This document shows, piece after piece, positions 3,035 to 50,250 of a stretch of DNA of 64,000 nucleotides; within the stretch, counting starts at the first letter, position 1; the number at the start of each line of letters is the position of its first letter. The notes under the pieces were generated by a model. The model was not told the DNA's origin and did not search any database. It was given only the letters and a program-made list of their open reading frames with translations. Source of the DNA: Dimorphilus gyrociliatus. Its lineage: Eukaryota; Animalia; Annelida. Location of the stretch: assembly GCA_904063045.1 (NCBI GenBank), contig CAJFCJ010000019.1, forward strand, positions 3,230,684 through 3,294,683. Reading direction: 5' to 3'. The position numbers were made by a program, and so were the translations under genes.

Positions 3035-6000
3035 TTAAGCCGTTGAATCATCTGGAGTTGACCGCGTTATTTTCATAGAATCGCTAGTTCCATCTGAACT
3101 AGCCACAGAATGATCAATATCGCCATCATCACTATCGTCCAGAGCAGCTATGCCTCGCGAGGTTAATATGCTGTGACGTCCCATTCGTCTGAAGAATTAC
3201 ATATTAATTAAATACATTGGAAATAGTCTGAATCGAGTTCATGCGGCAAATATGTTAGAAAGAATATAATTAATATTAGAGCTGTCTGTAAATCATTAAG
3301 ATAAGACATACATCTTTCTAAGCAATTGAATAGTATAGATGATAAAAATAGGTCATGCTAGACAAATATATAATGCAGTTTTACCGTTAACTGCTTCAGT
3401 TTTCACCCCCGCTTTTGATAAGATTGGAGATTATACACTAAATAAAATCGGAAGAAACTATTCTACACTTACCCCGAGAGACCTTGATTAGCATTTCTTA
3501 ATTTGGCTTTTAAAGTTTCGTTTTCTATTTGTAGATTATGAATAGTTTCATTTGCCTCGTCCAATTCTCGGTGGATTTTCCTTTTTTGTTGATTTACTCT
3601 ACTAGTTTCCTCTTCACCTTCAGCCAATTGCCTTTTAACAAGTTTAACTTTATTATTAGCTTGTTCCATTTGTTCTTTCATTTGCTCTGCGATTCTACGT
3701 TCGTCGTCAATAGCCATTTGCATATCTTTCAATTTCTTGTCAGCTTTTCGAGTCTGTCTACTTAACAGCGTCTTTTCACGAAGTTCCTGAAATTGGAAAA
3801 TTTAAGTAGAATAAAAATAATTTTTAAATATTTCAAGTTTATACTTTATCCAATTGTCCTTCCAGAGTCACAATTTTTCCTTCTAGCTGTTGTCGATTCG
3901 TGCGATTTATGGTCTGCACTTGGTCTTCAAGTTCAGCTATCTTGGACTTCAAGTCTCTATTCTGTCGTCCTAATTTTTCGCATTCAACTTCCATTTTTTG
4001 CGCATTGCCTCGTTCTGACTGAAGTTCGCTGGTTATCTGCTCAACCTGTTGCTGTAATTTTCGTAACCTGTAAGGGAAATATAAGACTTAATGATGTACT
4101 TGATTAAACAATGTTAACTATAAATCTTACTTTTCTTCCAGGGCTTCTGAATGGCTTTGCTCATCATCTAATTCTTCTTCTAGTTCCGTTAAACGACCAT
4201 CTAATTTTTTCTTTTCTTCTATTGCTGAATTCTTTAGAGATTCCACGGTGGCTAAGTCATTCAGTGCCTCATCTCTCTCGGCTTCAGCCATTTTCTTTAC
4301 TCTTTCCATATTTTGGAAAATGTCATTGGTTTGTTGTAATTCTCCTTCGAGTTGCTTAACTCGTCTCTCAAGTTGCCTCAATTTGTTGATAGCTTCATCC
4401 TTTTGTTGAAAAGCCTCCTGAGCCTCCTTCTGATACTGCTGAGCAGTTACTGAAGCTCGTTTCAAAGCTTTATTAGTTTCATCCCTTCCTCTAATTGCAT
4501 TTTCCAAAGCTTCGTCTTTGCTATTTAGTTGGAATTCTAATTTCTTTTTTTCAGAAAGAATTGTATTTTTTTGTTTTCTTTCTTCATCTAAGTGATTTTC
4601 CAAATCTCTTAATTGTCTAAGTAGAGCTCGTCTAGCGTCTTCTTCACTTTCCTCCTTCGCAGCTCTCTCTCTTTCCATTTGTTGTTTGAGAGCATTGTAC
4701 GTGACTTCAATTCTAGATTTAGCATCTTCCGCCAGAAGCACCTCGTCTTCTCGTTCTATCAAAAGCTGCTCCAACTCTTGAATTTTATCATTCAATAATC
4801 TGTTATTTCGTTCTAATTCAGCAGCGTTTTGACCTTTAGCGTCTTTACTGGAGATAATCTCATCTAATTCTAATTTTTGTCTTTTATTTATTCTGTCCAG
4901 TTCATTCATCCTGACAGCAACATCTTCTACTTCTCTTTGGAGGGTTAGAATTTTAGTCTCTTTATCTCTGCATTCGCTTGCGATTTGATCGCGTTCAGCG
5001 ACGACTTTATCTCGAGCTACTCTCTCTTCAGCCATTCCTTGGTCGAACTTTCTAGCTTTACGGTCCAAAGTTGCAAGCTGATTGCGTGACTGAGCAACTT
5101 CATTTAGAGCGTCTTCCAATTCAGTTTGGTACTTATTTCTGGATTTTAGCGCTTTGTCAAGATCTAGTTGCATAGCAGAAAGGCGATCTTCCAATTCAAT
5201 GATGTCTCTGGAAAGTTTTGATTTGGATTCTTCTGCTGTTTTAGCGGCTAATGATTCAGCCTCTAGATTTCTCTTTAGATCAGCTTCTTTTCTCTCTCTT
5301 TCATTCAGTTTTGCTTCGTATTTTCCTTTCAGCTCTTCTAACTCTACAATTTGATCATTAAGATTGTCGTTTTCTCTCTCCAGAGTTCTGAGTTGATTTT
5401 GAAACGAGAGTTTTCCCCTAGTTTCGTCTTCAAGATTGGCTTGATTGTCATGCAATTGGCCTTCAAGAAATTCCACCTGCTTCTTGGATTGGGCAAGCAA
5501 AGATTCAGCTGCTGCTAGTTGTTGGCTGTAACTATCAATTTCTAACAGTAATTTACTGGATCTTTCTTGTAAATCATTTCTTTCGCCTTCGGCTTCATTT
5601 AGACGCAGCTGATAATCAGCATTACTAGATTCAGCAATTTTTCGTTTCCTATCTGCTTCTGATTTGGCACTCTGTAGTAGTTTATTTTCATTCATTAAAT
5701 CGCTATTTTCGGCCTCTAAAGTAACTCGAGTCTTCTCCAAAGTTCCCTTTTGTTTTCTCACTTGGTCTAACTGCTCATTTAGTTGTTCTACTTGTTGAAG
5801 GTTTTTTTGTTTTAGAGCAGCAATTGTTCTATCTGCCGATTTTTTTTCGTCTTCTATAGCATGTATAGTTTTCTTCAATTCGTCATCCCGTTTTCTCTGC
5901 AGGTCGTGAACTGCCTGATTATGATCTTGGGTCTCCTCCAATTCATTTTTCATTTTTTCAAAATCATTTTCCAATTCTTTTCGTTGATGATCGACACGCT

Positions 6001-9000
6001 TTCTCTTTTCACGCTCTTCTTTTAAATCTTCATGGGCTTCAGTAATTTGAGCTTCGAGATCTCTTATTTGCCTTTGCATGGATGTTCTCCCTGTTACTTC
6101 TTCTTCAATTTGGGTTAAAGCATTTTGTAACTCATTTTCTCTTTTGCTTAATTGAGTTTGTAATTCTGTGAGCTGCTCCATTTTTTCGTTTAGTTGGTCT
6201 TTTACTTCTACTAATTCCTGTTCTAGTCGTCTTTTAGCTTTTTCTAAATTAACTCTCAACTCTTGCTCCTTCCTAAGCCTATCTTCCAAATCTTTAATAG
6301 TATTCTCATATTTTGTCTTTAGCCGTCCCAACCCTTTTCCTTTTTCTTCCTCCTCCCCAAGTGACTGAGTTAAATCGTTTACTCTCTCCTCCAAAGTCTT
6401 TTTCTCTTTTGCAGTTCTCTGTAAAGTGTCTTCAAGCATAGCCGAAGTTTCTTCAAATTTTTTCAATTTAGTTTCCATTTGCATTTTTTCCATTTGTATT
6501 TTTTGCCTCATTTGTTCTTCATCCTCTAATTGATCTTCCAAGTCTTTTAATAAACCTTGAAGCTTGTTTTTCTCTCTTGAAACTTCCTCTATTCTTTGGA
6601 CTTCTTCTTCACATCTAGTTCCCATATCAGTTAACATATCTTCCAGCTCTTTTTTTCGTTCTTGCAAACGAAGACGTTCTTCATCTGCTTCTTGTGCTGT
6701 CTCAGCTTCTTGACGAAGTTTTTCACTAAGGATGTTCTTTTCCTCTGCTAACTGAGCAACCTGGTCTCGCATTACGGTTACATCTCGTTCTGCATTTTCC
6801 AACATTCGAGATGCGTCTTTATACTTTGTTTCCATGTTTTGTAGTACCTCTTCATGTTTAGTAGCTTGTAAAATAGGCTTAACTTTCGTAAAGAGTCGCC
6901 ACCATTGCCAGTTTCTCAGTTTCAAATATGCTGCACAATTTCTTTGAATTACCTTGAGTGCATTTAATTGTTGTTGCCTCTTATTCAACTGTCGACGAGC
7001 AAGACATCCTCGGCAGTACGCTTGAAACTGTATTATCAAATCTGTCAAACGCAAATCTCTTTCCTCTTCAAGATGAGCTAAAACACCCGCTCTGAAGAAG
7101 ATTTTAGATTGCCCAATACGGAATAAATTAGTATCAAGTTCCAAAGATTGTAACATTCGTCTGCAAGCTTCTTTCCCATCCATAAATCCACGAGGAATAA
7201 CGTTAGGAGTAAGCAATTCATATCGTTGTCTAAATTCCTGAAAGAGTATTCGATTTGGAAACCCTTGTCGACAAATTCTTATTCCCTCCAACACACCATT
7301 ACATCTTAATTGATCCAAGACCAAATGAGCATCTATTTTTCCAGCCTTCTTCTCGTGATTTGGAATGATACAACGAACAAAATTTGGATTGGTATTGTTT
7401 AATGTGGACATTAACCTCGAAAGCTGCTCCTTATACAATCCACCAACAGTTCTAAACATTCCCTTACGCGTTCTTGCACCAAACTGAGATTCTGCTGATG
7501 CCATATTACTCATTCCTATAATTTCTGCGTCTTTCCAAATATTTTTAATGAAAGTATCATTTGATTCTTGAAGTAGCTGTACAACATTTTCATTCAAGGG
7601 GTCCATATTTTTCAAAAGCCATTGATCGCACGAATAATCTACATCACCAGCGTAATGTCTAAGAGTAAAGGAAATATTATTTTTCCTCAAAGCTTCTGGT
7701 TTTTTGAATTTTGGATGATTAGAATGTTGTTGAATTAATTTATTTATCAAAGTTTTATCGTTTGCCTTTGGAAACCAGCACTCTTCATCTATGAGAGACA
7801 AAATACCAACAGGTTTTTCAAGGAGGTCAATGGTTGGTTGAAGATCTAATCCAAAATCAATGAATGTCCATTCGATGCCTTCGCGTTTGTATTCTTCTTG
7901 CTCCATAATGAACATAGTGTGGTTAAACAGCTGTTGCAACTTCTCATTGGTATAGTTGATGCAAAGTTGTTCAAAGGAATTCAACTGAAAAAAAATAATA
8001 AATTAAAAAATTGTTAATTAGTTTTCATAATACGAGGAAACAAAAAAATTTCTTTATATCTTCTATCCAATCAATTATCTATCATCGAACGTTTCAGCTA
8101 AAGTATTAATAATCTATAATTCTAATTATCGAAACAACACGACAAACGTAAAATCCCAGAAAATCTAAAATAAAAATAATAATAACAACAACAATTCGCC
8201 GGAAGTCAGCTTACCTTATCAACACCCTGGAAGATTTACACACAAGGATAAATGATTATTTCAGAAAAACTTCCGCAAATTAAAAATATCTATTATTCAC
8301 CGTATCATAATGATTGACTCACGAAAATGCATAAATGTTACTCACATGAAAAATTTCAAATCCGGCTATGTCTAAAATACCAATGAATGATGCTCCTTGT
8401 CGTTTGGTCCTATCAAGAGATTTGTTAATTCTTTGAACCAACCACTTAAACATTCTTTCATATATGGCCTTGCTGATAGCTTCTACTGCAAATTCGACTT
8501 GTTCCTTTGTTTGCGCTTTATTAACGTACTCTCTTCCCACGCGTATTCTTGGTCTGAGGAATGCTCTAGTCATTTCCGTTACGGGAACTCCTAGAAGATG
8601 GCAAGCTTTTTGTGCAACAGTATTATCTGGAAGAGTTGCTTGTTCCTGGCGTGCATCCGCCTTTATTTTAATGTTTCCTAATTGCAATACTGCGGAAATT
8701 GTTTTCAAAACTGCTAGTATTTCTTCTTCCACAAATCCCATGATATTCATAGCATCTAAGAGCTGTTTATACATATCAATATCATCAGTTCCTGGAACGG
8801 GTACTTGACCATAAGTTAAATATCTATATTCTTTTATGTCTTGTAATAGTAGCTGGCTTCTCTGCTCCGGATCTTTACAGCCGGCAAGTAACTGGTAAAA
8901 TATGTGGAAGCTTCTCTCATCAGGAGCTTGACGAACAGCTCGTGATTTTTCCAGTAAATAGGTCTCAATGTTAGCTCCAGATATGAAGCCAGAGGTATCA

Positions 9001-47183: not shown

Positions 47184-47634
47184 TAGATACTAATACTATG
47201 TGTTCTTATATCTTTTTTTAGGTGACGTCAATGTAAATTTTATTTTAATTTGTCATTAATAAAAGTTCACTCAACTAGTTGTGTTCATAAATTTAACTTT
47301 GTAAAAGAAGGAAAAAGATCAGTCAAAGGTTTATAGCATGAATAGAGTTTCTTTGTTGTAAAAGGTTCTTTTTTAAAAGAAGACATTGTCTGTAGTTGAA
47401 GATTGATTTCCTTAATAAATATGTATATGTTTTATAAAATTGCTTATTAAATCTTCTTGAAGAGTAAATATTAAACATGAAATAAATACTGATGAAAAAT
47501 GAAATGTTTATCTTAAGGATAATACATTGTATTCCCTTCAATAGGCTTTTGACTTTTCAACAACGATCAATCGAACTCTGTGTACGTGCGGTTGCCCGAC
47601 AAAATTTATTGACGTTCATATTTGAGCAATAGAT

Positions 47635-48543
47635 ATGCCGCTCGACAGTGTCTTAGTAGAATGTCCGAACAAAAACTCAGGATGTAAGGTTAAATTAAAG
47701 ACAAAAGATGTTGAATATCATGAGGAAAACTGTGATTTTAGGTAGATATTACGTTTGTATGTTTTGTTTGTGTAATAACAAATAGTATTTTATATCAGCA
47801 CTATTGAATGTGAGGGTTGTCACAAAGAGTTAAAAAGGAAAGACTTGCGTCAACACGAAAAGATAAAGAGGTGTGTTGAATCAAAACTAAAGAGAGAGTT
47901 GATAAAGGCAACCAAAGGGTTTAATGATGAAAATAAGCAACATATATTAAAAATTAAAATGGATAGTGCTAAGAGAACTGGTAGACAACTACGCCAATAT
48001 CACAATAGATTACATGAGAAAATTGGATTCAGTCCTAGAGTTCCTAGTGCAACTCGTCGCAGTCCTCAATTCTTTTTCTCTACAATATGTAAACGTTGCA
48101 ACCGTTCTTTCAACGACACTACTAATCATTCATCCGCATGTACTTGGCACGAAGGGGTAAACACTAGAATATCAGTATTAATCACTTAATTTTAAAGCTA
48201 TTTTTATTCTTACGCAGCCAATAGTAAGTATTATACAACAAGTTATATTTAAAATTTTTGTAAAATCTTTAATTAACAGCTTCCGGTCTTTGGAGTAAGT
48301 TTAAATGATTTTTAAAAAAGACTCCTTTCTTTAATATATTATAGCTATATAAGGTTTTCTTTATCTTTTAAAAAACATTATTTACTACAATTGTCGTCTA
48401 CATTCTTACAATGGACTAACAGGGGGTAATTAAAACCGGTCTATTTGTGTCAATGGTAAATTATTTAAACCTTCTTTCAGACTTGTCAAGCCTGTGGAAG
48501 ATTAGATTATCAAATAGGTTGTATAGCCGGTGAGCACTCCTGA
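47635..48543 (+). CDS. Unnamed 186-aa protein: TRAF-type zinc finger, helical linker, CHORD-like Cys/His zinc finger; model includes four micro-exons
   Basis: Exons 47635-47741, 47799-48156, 48218-48223, 48280-48294, 48345-48353, 48423-48425, 48481-48543 (561 nt). VECPNKNSGCKVKLKTKDVEYHEENCDFSTIECEGC is a TRAF-type ZF pattern. C-terminus CKRCNRSFNDTTNHSSACTWHEG-PI-LPVFG-LYK-G-TCQACGRLDYQIGCIAGEHS*. AATAAA at 48559-48564. Confidence 0.75.
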
Positions 48544-48758
48544 TTTGGCAGTACTTAGAATAAATAGGGCGTTCATTTTAAACTAATTGGACAAACGTTA
48601 AGGTTGGTTAAAAAGAGAAACTATATATATATAGATATTTGTATTAAACTAATATAAAGGTAATTTTAGTTATGAAGTATCAAAATTGAATTCAACTGAA
48701 GCATAAATTCAATAAAAAGTTTTTAACAATCATTAAACTCTTGTTTTTTAGTTAAAAC

Positions 48759-50250
48759 TTATAACTTTTCAAATTTTAACACCCAGGCATAAGGATTAGG
48801 TAGAAGGGGAAGAGGAATATTTGGCATTTCGATTGATATACCTCCTCCTAAACCTCTCTTTTGCCAATGTAAAGTTTTTTGATAACCTAACATTGTCACC
48901 TGTGTTTCTTGAATGGGTTGAATCATTCCTAATTGTAGGTTATTTGTTTTAGGCCATTTTAATAAAATACCATAAACGGTCTTTTCTTTTGCGGTAAACC
49001 AAATGTCATTTGATACTGTGTCATTTGCTCTTTTCCATGGTTGAGTATTGTAGATTGCCTCTCCGTTTACTTTTAACCAAGCACCCATCTGTCTCAGTCT
49101 TTCCTCATATATGGGTGATATTTTTCCATCTTTTCTCGGACCTATATTCATTAAAAGGTTTCCGTTACAACTGACAGTCATAGCTAAGGTTTTTATCAAT
49201 TCCTCAATTGTTAAATATTGCGATAAATCAGCTTCTCTTCTATAACCAAATGAATTCTTATCGATATTTAAAGCATTTTCAAAACGATGTTTTTGAATAA
49301 CCCCTATAAATGTAACACTAACATATCAATTTCAAAGAAATATAGCATTCCACACATACCTGGATTGTAACGATCTTGACAAGTAAAAACTCCCCCATGT
49401 TGGCACATTGTACCAACTCCCCACCTATCATTGGTTACAACCGAATCTCTTACAGGACTGTCATTGTATAACCAGGCTATAAATTTTTTACTTTCCCAAT
49501 AGTCCGGTCCAGTTCCCCAATCCCCATCGGACCAAACTACTTCTGGCTTATAAGTATTTACCAATTCATACAGTTCGGGCATGGTCTTTGATTTTACAAA
49601 ATAATTAGTTTTAAATTTATTTGCTTGATCCATAAGATATAAAGGATGAAACCATTCGTAAAGGGAATGATATAAGCCGAAGTGGATATTTGTTTTACGC
49701 CTTATCGAATCAGCCAGCATCCCCACTAGGTCTTTGTTTGGTCCAACAGCCTTAGAATTCCAATTGAAAGATACATTAGACGGCCAATTTGTATAACCTT
49801 CGTGATGCTTAGCCGTCAGAACAACATATCTAATACAGAAGGAACGTGTCTATAAAATAATAATAGCATCGAAAGAGAAAACACAAACTTGGCGCCGGAA
49901 GATTCGAATAATTCGGCCCATTCATCAGGATTATAAAATTCAGTGGTGAAATCCCTAGCAAAGTCTGCATACGTCCAACCTGGCTTATAGTTTTTTTCTA
50001 CAAACTGGACATAGTTAGCTTTCTTGTCACCCTGCCAATGCTGCCAAAACCATTCTGATCCGTAGGCAGGTACTGAAAATACTCCCCAATGTATAAAAAT
50101 TCCAAATTTTGCGTCATTATACCATTGAGGAAGTGGTCGTTTATCTAAGGACTCCCATTCGGGTAAGTATTTATGAACATCTACCGGTTGTAACGATATT
50201 AATAAAAAAAATATCAGAAGGCGGCTGTAAACAGCAGTCATATTTAACAT
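48759..50250 (-). CDS. FUCA1: Lysosomal alpha-L-fucosidase (GH29), multi-exon; start at ATG 50250 or 50241
   Basis: Signal peptide; [30 protein letters not shown]; [12 protein letters not shown]; [13 protein letters not shown]; nucleophile motif VVWSDGDW; VVTNDRWG; [13 protein letters not shown]1 versus FUCA2 orthology not resolved. Confidence 0.95.

What the first reader, a model, noticed from the sequence alone, without database searches (positions are those of the whole stretch)
48157..48543. Four consecutive symmetric micro-exons (6, 15, 9, 3 nt) build a CHORD-like zinc finger
After ...CTWHEG|GTAAAC the sequence shows regularly spaced AG-exon-GT units: CCAATA (48218-23, PI), CTTCCGGTCTTTGGA (48280-94, LPVFG), CTATATAAG (48345-53, LYK) and GGG (48423-25, G). 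They are separated by introns of 61, 56, 50, 69 and 55 nt, the typical size in this window. All are phase 0, so any subset keeps the frame. The joined peptide CNRSFNDTTNHSSACTWHEG-PILPVFGLYKG-TCQAC...GCIAGEH parallels the CHORD consensus as I recall it (C..RF...N...ACTYHPG.PVFH.ALKGW.CC...GC..G.H), which independently supports the tiny exons. Such an array recalls schistosome micro-exon genes, where skipping generates variants, but here it would tune a spacer inside a zinc-binding domain. The 9-nt exon has a weak donor (GTTTTC).
Basis: partly seen in the sequence, partly recalled or inferred. Interest (0 to 1): 0.85.

Follow-up and report, generated by a model that had tools for sequence, protein, structure and literature searches.

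The report
Ancient codon-by-codon micro-exon array
In a tiny marine worm, eight amino acids in the middle of a zinc-binding domain are spliced together from three real exons of 6, 15 and 3 bases (the proposed fourth exon is not supported); the same short stretch is cut into even more one-codon exons in a lamp shell, a coral and another marine animal, so this odd gene layout is probably as old as the coral-bilaterian split.

Summary
The gene is Dimorphilus gyrociliatus DgyrCDS12113. Three of the four micro-exons are real. An RNA-derived contig joins 48156 to the 6-, 15- and 3-nt exons and to 48481, and a related species keeps them with only synonymous changes. The 9-nt LYK unit is absent from the RNA contigs, the relative and every homologous protein, so it is most likely a chance AG..GT. 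The public model misses the 3-nt exon. The gene belongs to an undescribed RING-TRAF-coiled-coil-CHORD-like family (coral, amphioxus, tunicate, brachiopod, snail) with a nearly fixed His-x11-Cys spacer. The main result is deep conservation. Lingula cuts the same eight codons into six exons (3,3,6,6,3,3 nt), an unidentified marine animal into five, and a coral into at least four. All are phase 0, many positions are shared, and 9 of 10 consecutive codon boundaries are used across species, while the long coding exon upstream is intron-free in coral and Lingula. Inclusion dominates. Coral RNA shows rare exact skips (3 contigs against 43). A worm intermediate has only the last intron removed, which fits sequential 3'-first splicing. 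It is not a schistosome-type variant generator. The scan noted similar one-codon exons on other DNA of this genome (SOWAH).

The parts
47545..47622 (+). Highly conserved non-coding block just upstream of the start codon (promoter or 5' UTR element; holds a GTTGCC X-box-like half site)
   Evidence: Near-identical in L001 while neighbouring non-coding DNA diverges; no Rfam match; function untested
47635..47741 (+). First coding exon (start of one TRAF-type zinc finger); 5' end of the transcript not resolved
   Evidence: RNA contig from 47636; public model P0001; weak Pfam zf-TRAF/Sina hits
47742..47798 (+). Intron, 57 nt
   Evidence: RNA joint
47799..48156 (+). Long exon: rest of TRAF finger, coiled coil, and first half of the CHORD-like domain (C-x2-C-x13-C-x2-H from 48088), ending WHEG at phase 0
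48157..48217 (+). Intron 1 of the array (61 nt, phase 0); position shared with Lingula, L018, coral and amphioxus
48218..48223 (+). Micro-exon, 6 nt, Pro-Ile
   Evidence: In RNA contig; conserved in L001 with one synonymous change
48224..48279 (+). Intron 2 of the array (56 nt, phase 0); position shared with Lingula and L018
48280..48294 (+). Micro-exon, 15 nt, Leu-Pro-Val-Phe-Gly
   Evidence: In RNA contig; three synonymous changes in L001
48295..48422 (+). Intron 3 of the array (128 nt, about twice the local norm; 116 nt in L001); position shared with Lingula and L018
48345..48353 (+).
   Evidence: Absent from RNA contigs, from L001 and from all homologs; donor GTTTTC; chance rate 9-17%
48423..48425 (+). 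Micro-exon, 3 nt, Gly; missing from the public gene model
   Evidence: conserved in L001; equivalent 3-nt Gly exon in Lingula and L018
48426..48480 (+). Intron 4 of the array (55 nt); removed while introns 1-3 are still present in a minor contig
   Evidence: record 3 and joint 48424 to 48480
48481..48543 (+). Last coding exon: second half of the zinc domain (C-x2-C-x8-C-x4-H) and stop; the exon continues as 3' UTR to 48602
48603..48669 (+). 3' UTR intron, 67 nt, starting 59 nt after the stop codon

Best explanation
This is a real gene of an undescribed animal family of probable ubiquitin-ligase-type proteins (RING, two TRAF-type zinc fingers, coiled coil, C-terminal CHORD-like two-zinc domain); the worm copy lacks the RING and first TRAF finger. 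SHOWN: the loop between the two halves of the zinc domain is encoded by three phase-0 micro-exons (6, 15, 3 nt) that are all included in the main mRNA. STRONGLY INFERRED: they are the remnant of an old array in which this loop was cut at most codon boundaries; lineages lost different introns, and some lost all. INFERRED mechanism: an exon of 3-15 nt cannot hold spliceosomes at both ends, so the introns are recognised across the intron and removed one at a time, last intron first. Each step fuses a micro-exon to the long exon downstream. Upstream introns are detained, and any retained intron brings a stop before the last four zinc ligands. Only whole-codon (phase 0) splits were tolerated, because a skipped piece then keeps the frame. 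SPECULATIVE: the array persists because it works as a slow, all-or-nothing splicing gate on production of the full-length protein, not as a length tuner.
For: RNA joint with the three exons, and an intermediate with only intron 4 removed at about 14% of summed contig depth. Conservation with synonymous changes only. Lingula exons 3,3,6,6,3,3 nt, L018 exons 3,3,12,3,3 nt, coral exons 3,12,3 nt with codons identical to coral transcripts. A blind scan for YAG-(3-15 nt)-GTRRG returns only these exons, in order, in 2.2 kb of Lingula and 3 kb of L018 DNA. All 4 worm positions and all 6 L018 positions lie among Lingula's 7 (simulated P 0.009 and 0.0002); nine distinct positions are all phase 0 (P about 0.002 if phase 0 has odds 0.5). 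Spacer His-x11-Cys nearly invariant. Retention of any array intron gives a stop within 7-36 codons; first-intron-retained products occur in coral assemblies. Downstream-first removal with detained upstream introns is reported for plant microexons (PMC8831610); intron definition as the route for microexons is proposed in PMC8378409.
Against: Only one worm RNA run could be laid, as contigs, which drop rare forms and give no tissue information. Amphioxus keeps one intron; Styela and Biomphalaria have none in the loop, so the array is dispensable in some lineages. Coral shares 4 of 6 known positions with Lingula, not significant alone (P 0.09); two coral positions are inferred and one is unknown. 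The protein tree is unresolved, so orthology is not proven. L018's exons have no RNA of their own. Nothing here tests regulation, ligase activity or zinc binding; the fold prediction was poor (pLDDT 57).
Confidence: 0.62

Rival explanations
1. Neutral relic or intron-gain hot spot. The micro-exons are constitutive and have no regulatory role. The introns persist because they are tolerated (strong donors, frame-safe errors), and the retained and skipped forms are splicing noise. This rival shares the shown facts with the best explanation and differs on function and possibly on ancestry (repeated gains instead of one old array).
For: Complete loss of loop introns in Styela and Biomphalaria and near-complete loss in amphioxus with the same spacer; lineage-specific positions (4 in Lingula, 5 and 9 in coral); skipped forms are rare.
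Against: Four array introns survive in a genome compacted by intron loss (PMC7854359). The rest of the coding sequence is intron-free for 855-1026 nt in coral and Lingula, so the clustering is extreme. Shared positions among lophotrochozoans exceed chance.
Confidence: 0.25
2. One reading: combinatorial in-frame skipping (schistosome MEG-like) makes protein variants with different loop lengths that tune partner binding.
For: All exons are symmetric. Coral RNA has exact skips of the 12-nt exon (1 contig) and of a single Met codon (2 contigs from two runs). The loop maps onto the RAR1 segment after His181 that carries the Hsp90-contacting His188/Asp189.
Against: 43 coral contigs have full inclusion against 3 with skips. 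The worm RNA shows one spliced form. Spacer length is the same in intron-free lineages. The 9-nt exon is unsupported. Micro-exons are 24 of 549 coding bases, unlike MEGs (up to 75%, PMC4015677).
Confidence: 0.08
3. Neural-type regulated microexons (eMIC/SRRM234 programme): the full loop is made only in neurons and other cells skip it.
For: Sizes of 3-15 nt and multiples of three. The intron before the worm 3-nt exon is long and AG-poor (68 nt without AG in the window, 110 nt in L001), and long AG exclusion zones are an eMIC feature (PMC8797185).
Against: The array is present in coral, whereas the eMIC programme is reported to have arisen in bilaterian ancestors (PMC8797185). Donors are strong. 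UGC near the acceptor is inconsistent. No fully skipped form was seen in worm or coral contigs.
Confidence: 0.05

Closest known systems
Constitutive conserved microexons in protein domain cores (plant AP2 and invertase 9-nt exons; PMC8831610)
   Same: Tiny in-frame exons needed for a conserved motif, missed by annotation, merged by intron loss in some lineages, downstream intron removed first.
   Different: Those are mostly single microexons. Here 3-6 consecutive ones, down to back-to-back 3-nt exons, cut one loop at most codon boundaries, in animals from coral to annelid.
Schistosoma micro-exon genes (MEGs; reviewed in PMC4015677)
   Same: Consecutive symmetric micro-exons; in-frame skipping is possible and seen at low level in coral.
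   Different: MEGs are mostly signal-peptide-bearing secreted proteins with micro-exons making up to 75% of the coding sequence and several skipping variants. Here 24 of 549 coding bases, a conserved zinc domain in an intracellular-type protein, and one dominant form.
CHORD domain (RAR1, CHORDC1/Chp1, melusin; Pfam PF04968; PDB 2XCM, 2YRT) and the related Btk/DUF8254 zinc motifs
   Same: Same order of eight ligands (C,C,C,H,C,C,C,H); N-terminal half aligns with RAR1 CHORD-II; predicted-structure similarity TM about 0.7 to CHORD clusters.
   Different: Spacing C-x2-C and H-x11-C-x2-C-x8-C instead of C-x4-C and H-x14-CC-x15-C; single copy, no CS domain; no His/Asp pair at the loop tip; below the Pfam cut-off.
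RING plus TRAF-zinc-finger E3 ligases (NRDP1/RNF41, RNF151, PDZRN3, TRAF, SINA)
   Same: RING, TRAF fingers and coiled coil in the full-length homologs, which databases label RNF151-like, NRDP1-like, PDZRN3 or TRIM22.
   Different: The C-terminal module is the CHORD-like domain, so those labels rest on the N-terminal part only. The worm protein has no RING.
Neural microexons (SRRM4/eMIC programme; PMC8797185)
   Same: Size range and frame preservation.
   Different: Those are switch-like alternative exons of bilaterian origin; these are mostly included and occur in a coral.

Membership tests
Schistosome-type micro-exon gene (MEG) | Consecutive symmetric micro-exons | tested here: met
   Three phase-0 exons of 6, 15, 3 nt
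Schistosome-type micro-exon gene (MEG) | Micro-exons make up most of the coding sequence | tested here: not met
   24 of 549 coding bases; criterion from PMC4015677
Schistosome-type micro-exon gene (MEG) | Many variants by exon skipping | tested here: inconclusive
   None in worm contigs; 3 skipped against 43 full coral contigs; contigs drop rare forms
Schistosome-type micro-exon gene (MEG) | Secreted protein with signal peptide | tested here: not met
   The N-terminus is a zinc finger (RING in homologs) with no hydrophobic leader, by inspection; no predictor was run
CHORD domain (PF04968) | Eight zinc ligands in the order C,C,C,H,C,C,C,H | tested here: met
   Invariant columns of alignment A3; RAR1 ligands from PMC2935968
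CHORD domain (PF04968) | CHORD ligand spacing and Pfam score above the cut-off | tested here: not met
   Spacing differs; 4 of 13 members hit weakly, best E 0.014; one homolog 16.2 bits against a cut-off of 24.6
CHORD domain (PF04968) | Invariant His and Asp/Glu at the loop tip that contact Hsp90-bound nucleotide | tested here: not met
   The loop reads P-hydrophobic-x-x-F-G-G without a conserved His/Asp pair; feature from PMC2935968
CHORD domain (PF04968) | Tandem pair of CHORDs, with a CS domain in animals | tested here: not met
   Single C-terminal copy in all homologs
CHORD domain (PF04968) | CHORD fold | tested here: inconclusive
   Model pLDDT 57; only hit 2XCM at Z 2.1; Atlas model TM 0.69-0.74 to CHORD clusters
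CHORD domain (PF04968) | Binds two zinc ions and Hsp90 | not testable with these tools
   Needs biochemistry
RING-TRAF E3 ligases | N-terminal RING domain | tested here: not met
   Absent in the worm protein, present in amphioxus, Lingula, coral and three unnamed homologs; worm 5' end not fully resolved
RING-TRAF E3 ligases | TRAF-type zinc finger and coiled coil | tested here: met
   zf-TRAF E 0.0014 in the worm (below cut-off) and above cut-off in homologs; helical region aligns across the family
Neural eMIC/SRRM microexons | Neuron-restricted inclusion dependent on eMIC | not testable with these tools
   No tissue-resolved reads available
Neural eMIC/SRRM microexons | UGC motif and long AG exclusion zone at the acceptor | tested here: inconclusive
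   Long AG-free zone before the worm 3-nt exon; UGC present in some Lingula and coral acceptors, absent in the window

The most novel reading that the evidence does not exclude
The last common ancestor of corals and bilaterians encoded this loop almost one codon per exon, and the array has been kept for over half a billion years, even through genome compaction, because it is a regulatory device: a serial splicing gate that lets only certain cells or stages finish the transcript and make the intact partner-binding domain of this ligase-type protein.
Probability: 0.25. Interest if true: 0.85.

Novelty: new variant of a known kind. Interest (0 to 1): 0.64.

Why it matters
Single 3-nt exons are known. 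A run of up to six consecutive 3-6 nt exons, with introns at 9 of 10 neighbouring codon boundaries across coral, brachiopod, annelid and another marine animal, was not found in the searchable literature. It gives a compact natural substrate (about 390 nt in the worm) for testing how the spliceosome handles back-to-back micro-exons and in what order. It is also a sharp test case for intron gain, loss and phase bias, and it suggests that dense micro-exon arrays predate the bilaterian neural microexon programme. In practice it corrects gene models: the worm model lacks one Gly, two coral genome models break exactly at the array, and the family is mislabelled in databases.

Tried and rejected
Rejected the 9-nt exon (RNA, sister species, homologs, chance rate). 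Rejected CHORD membership in the strict sense and MEG membership. Word-based homolog searches found only the worm protein and its sister, or the query itself; the family came from the exhaustive search with the domain. The first metagenome scan failed because its pattern crossed an intron; the last-exon pattern found L018. Walking the coral locus 16 kb past the first exon did not reach the Gly-Gly-Met exons or the last exon, because transposons fill the intron. Structure prediction was low-confidence and the fold search uninformative. The tree was unresolved. No Rfam hit in the window region. An 11-nt word shared by the long introns of the two worms is marginal (P 0.047, one of four tests, not positionally conserved). 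X-box half sites upstream are not consistent across species. The original MEG paper was not held. Searches used exon references or stored proteins (P0001, which lacks the 3-nt Gly, and homologs).

Full report
Identity. The exon 47800-48156 matches DgyrCDS12113 of the miniature annelid Dimorphilus gyrociliatus at 100%, on assembly GCA_904063045.1. The genome has very short introns (median 66 bp) and was compacted partly by intron loss (PMC7854359). The public protein has 182 residues and reads WHEG-PI-LPVFG-TC, so it contains the 6- and 15-nt exons but neither the 9-nt nor the 3-nt unit.

Observation. One public run (X1, kind not on record, but its contigs are spliced) holds the stretch. Its main contig, depth 185, joins 48156 to 48480 with 23 letters between, equal to the 6-nt exon, the 15-nt exon and two of the three G of the 3-nt exon; the third G is read at 48480. 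A second contig, depth 31, is unspliced from 48134 to 48425 and has only intron 48426-48480 removed, which confirms the 3-nt exon's donor. These contigs and the UTR contig reproduce the binned depths exactly, so no laid contig holds the 9-nt unit or retains the last intron. This is one run, as contigs, and possibly the study behind the assembly; rare forms can be missing.

The 9-nt unit. A syntenic locus from a related worm (L001 and L002, identical here, so counted once) keeps the 6-, 15- and 3-nt exons with four changes in 24 bases, all synonymous, while introns are 48-64% identical. Its intron between the 15- and 3-nt exons has no internal AG. The unit's donor GTTTTC is poor, and such an in-frame AG..GT unit occurs in 9% of shuffles and 17% of AT-rich window segments. 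No homolog has three extra residues. The real product is therefore 183 residues with WHEG-PI-LPVFG-G-TC.

Family. An exhaustive search with the C-terminal domain found nine further representatives: amphioxus, Montipora corals, Biomphalaria, Styela, Lingula and four unnamed transcript-derived proteins. Most carry RING, two TRAF-type fingers and a coiled coil before the domain; the worm, snail, tunicate and one unnamed protein lack the RING. The domain is C-x2-C-x13-C-x2-H-x11-C-x2-C-x8-C-x4-H. Its profile best matches RAR1 CHORD-II (E 7e-4) and also CHORDC1 (E 3.5e-3), and Atlas searches point to CHORD, Btk and DUF8254 clusters, but Pfam CHORD stays below cut-off. In RAR1 the segment after ligand His181 carries His188 and Asp189, which touch Hsp90-bound ADP (PMC2935968). 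The micro-exons encode the equivalent loop but without that pair, so the loop is plausibly a partner-binding surface with another partner (inference). No vertebrate was among the named hits, but a single-sequence search cannot show absence.

Deep conservation of the array. Number the codon boundaries of the loop 0 (after WHxG) to 9. The worm has introns at 0, 2, 7, 8. Exact spliced mapping of the Lingula RefSeq protein gives six micro-exons of 3,3,6,6,3,3 nt (P|M|LE|LF|G|G; positions 0,1,2,4,6,7,8) after one uninterrupted 1026-nt exon. A marine-metagenome animal contig (L018, 57% identical to transcript-derived P0004) has 3,3,12,3,3 nt (P|M|IQVF|G|G; 0,1,2,6,7,8). In both, a blind scan for YAG-(3-15 nt)-GTRRG returns only these exons, in order. 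A Montipora-type coral has P|VVDV|F as 3,12,3 nt, with codons identical to coral transcripts, after an 855-nt intron-free exon. Its remaining exons lie beyond the DNA I could fetch. Two facts indicate a separate 3-nt Met exon (positions 8 and 9). Two RNA runs lack exactly that ATG. And a broken NCBI model reads a pyrimidine tract and then Ser where the spliced sequence would give Cys, as expected if AG directly precedes the Cys codon; this is inferred. Amphioxus has only position 0; Styela and Biomphalaria have none. Nine of ten boundaries are used, all in phase 0. The overlap with Lingula is 4 of 4 for the worm (P 0.009), 6 of 6 for L018 (P 0.0002) and 4 of 6 for coral (P 0.09), conditional on the introns already lying in the loop. 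A lophotrochozoan-age array is well supported if L018 is an independent lineage (its organism is unknown). A coral-bilaterian age is likely from the shared clustering but less certain position by position. The tree does not resolve orthology.

Is it alternative? Among coral RNA-derived proteins, 43 contigs show full inclusion, one lacks exactly the 12-nt exon, two lack Met, and four end in the first array intron. Skipping therefore happens and keeps the frame, but it is a minority, and the 11-residue spacer is the same in intron-free lineages; one divergent protein has 12. This argues for a fixed loop with occasional errors or minor forms, not a variant generator.

Mechanism. Shown: inclusion of three exons, and one intermediate with only the last intron removed. 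From the literature: microexons are thought to need intron definition because of steric limits (PMC8378409), and plant microexons lose the downstream intron first and detain the upstream one (PMC8831610). Inferred: sequential 3'-first removal; retention of any intron stops translation before the last four ligands, which in a cross-braced CHORD-type fold would disable both zinc sites; phase 0 is enforced because only whole-codon pieces can be skipped safely. Speculative: the array is kept as a splicing gate on full-length protein. A neutral relic is the main rival.

Comparison and novelty. It works like known constitutive domain-core microexons, is not a MEG, is CHORD-like but not a CHORD, and is unlikely to be an eMIC-type neural exon set, since that programme is described as bilaterian (PMC8797185). 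Literature searches found no report of this gene family or of such a codon-by-codon array, within a library that lacks most subscription journals. An earlier scan note describes three one-codon exons in SOWAH in this genome (not checked here), so the phenomenon may be more common than recognised, which tempers the surprise. Verdict: new variant of a known kind, interest 0.64.

Limits set by the operators. The joined spliced model was not searched or folded; all searches used exon references or stored proteins.

Noticed in passing
window 47390-48899, minus strand: An RNA contig shows a 1510-nt GT..AG intron from inside the last coding exon of the alpha-L-fucosidase gene, spanning the whole micro-exon gene. 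It gives the fucosidase a different C-terminus and an end that overlaps the 3' end of the upstream coiled-coil gene. The donor is not conserved in L001.
   Followed up: partly
window 48603-48669: Intron in the 3' UTR starting 59 nt after the stop codon, just beyond the 50-55 nt distance that triggers nonsense-mediated decay in mammals (own knowledge); relevance in this worm unknown.
   Followed up: no
window 47545-47622 and L001 about 5672-5750: Non-coding block more conserved than the coding exons, with a GTTGCC half site; both species also have AG directly before ATATG at the start codon. The RNA contig has four unaligned letters before 47636, so the 5' end is unexplained.
   Followed up: partly
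L006 3017-3125, minus strand: A tRNA gene (Rfam RF00005, E 2e-11, with an insertion; anticodon region suggests Phe) sits in the Lingula intron between two consecutive 3-nt exons; ARAGORN missed it.
   Followed up: partly
P0019, P0020 (Montipora NCBI models); P0001: Public gene models break or frameshift exactly at the micro-exon array in two corals, and the worm model lacks the 3-nt Gly.
   Followed up: yes
P0001, P0007/P0034, P0008, P0011: The RING and first TRAF finger are missing in the worm, snail, tunicate and one unnamed homolog, suggesting repeated loss of ligase function with retention of the coiled coil and zinc domain.
   Followed up: partly
window 48374-48384 and L001 about 6444-6454: An 11-nt word is shared by the long third introns of the two worms; marginal significance (P 0.047) and different position.
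   Followed up: partly
L019 16109-20279: A Pao-type retrotransposon and other repeats lie in the coral intron after the 3-nt Phe exon, making it over 11 kb long.
   Followed up: no
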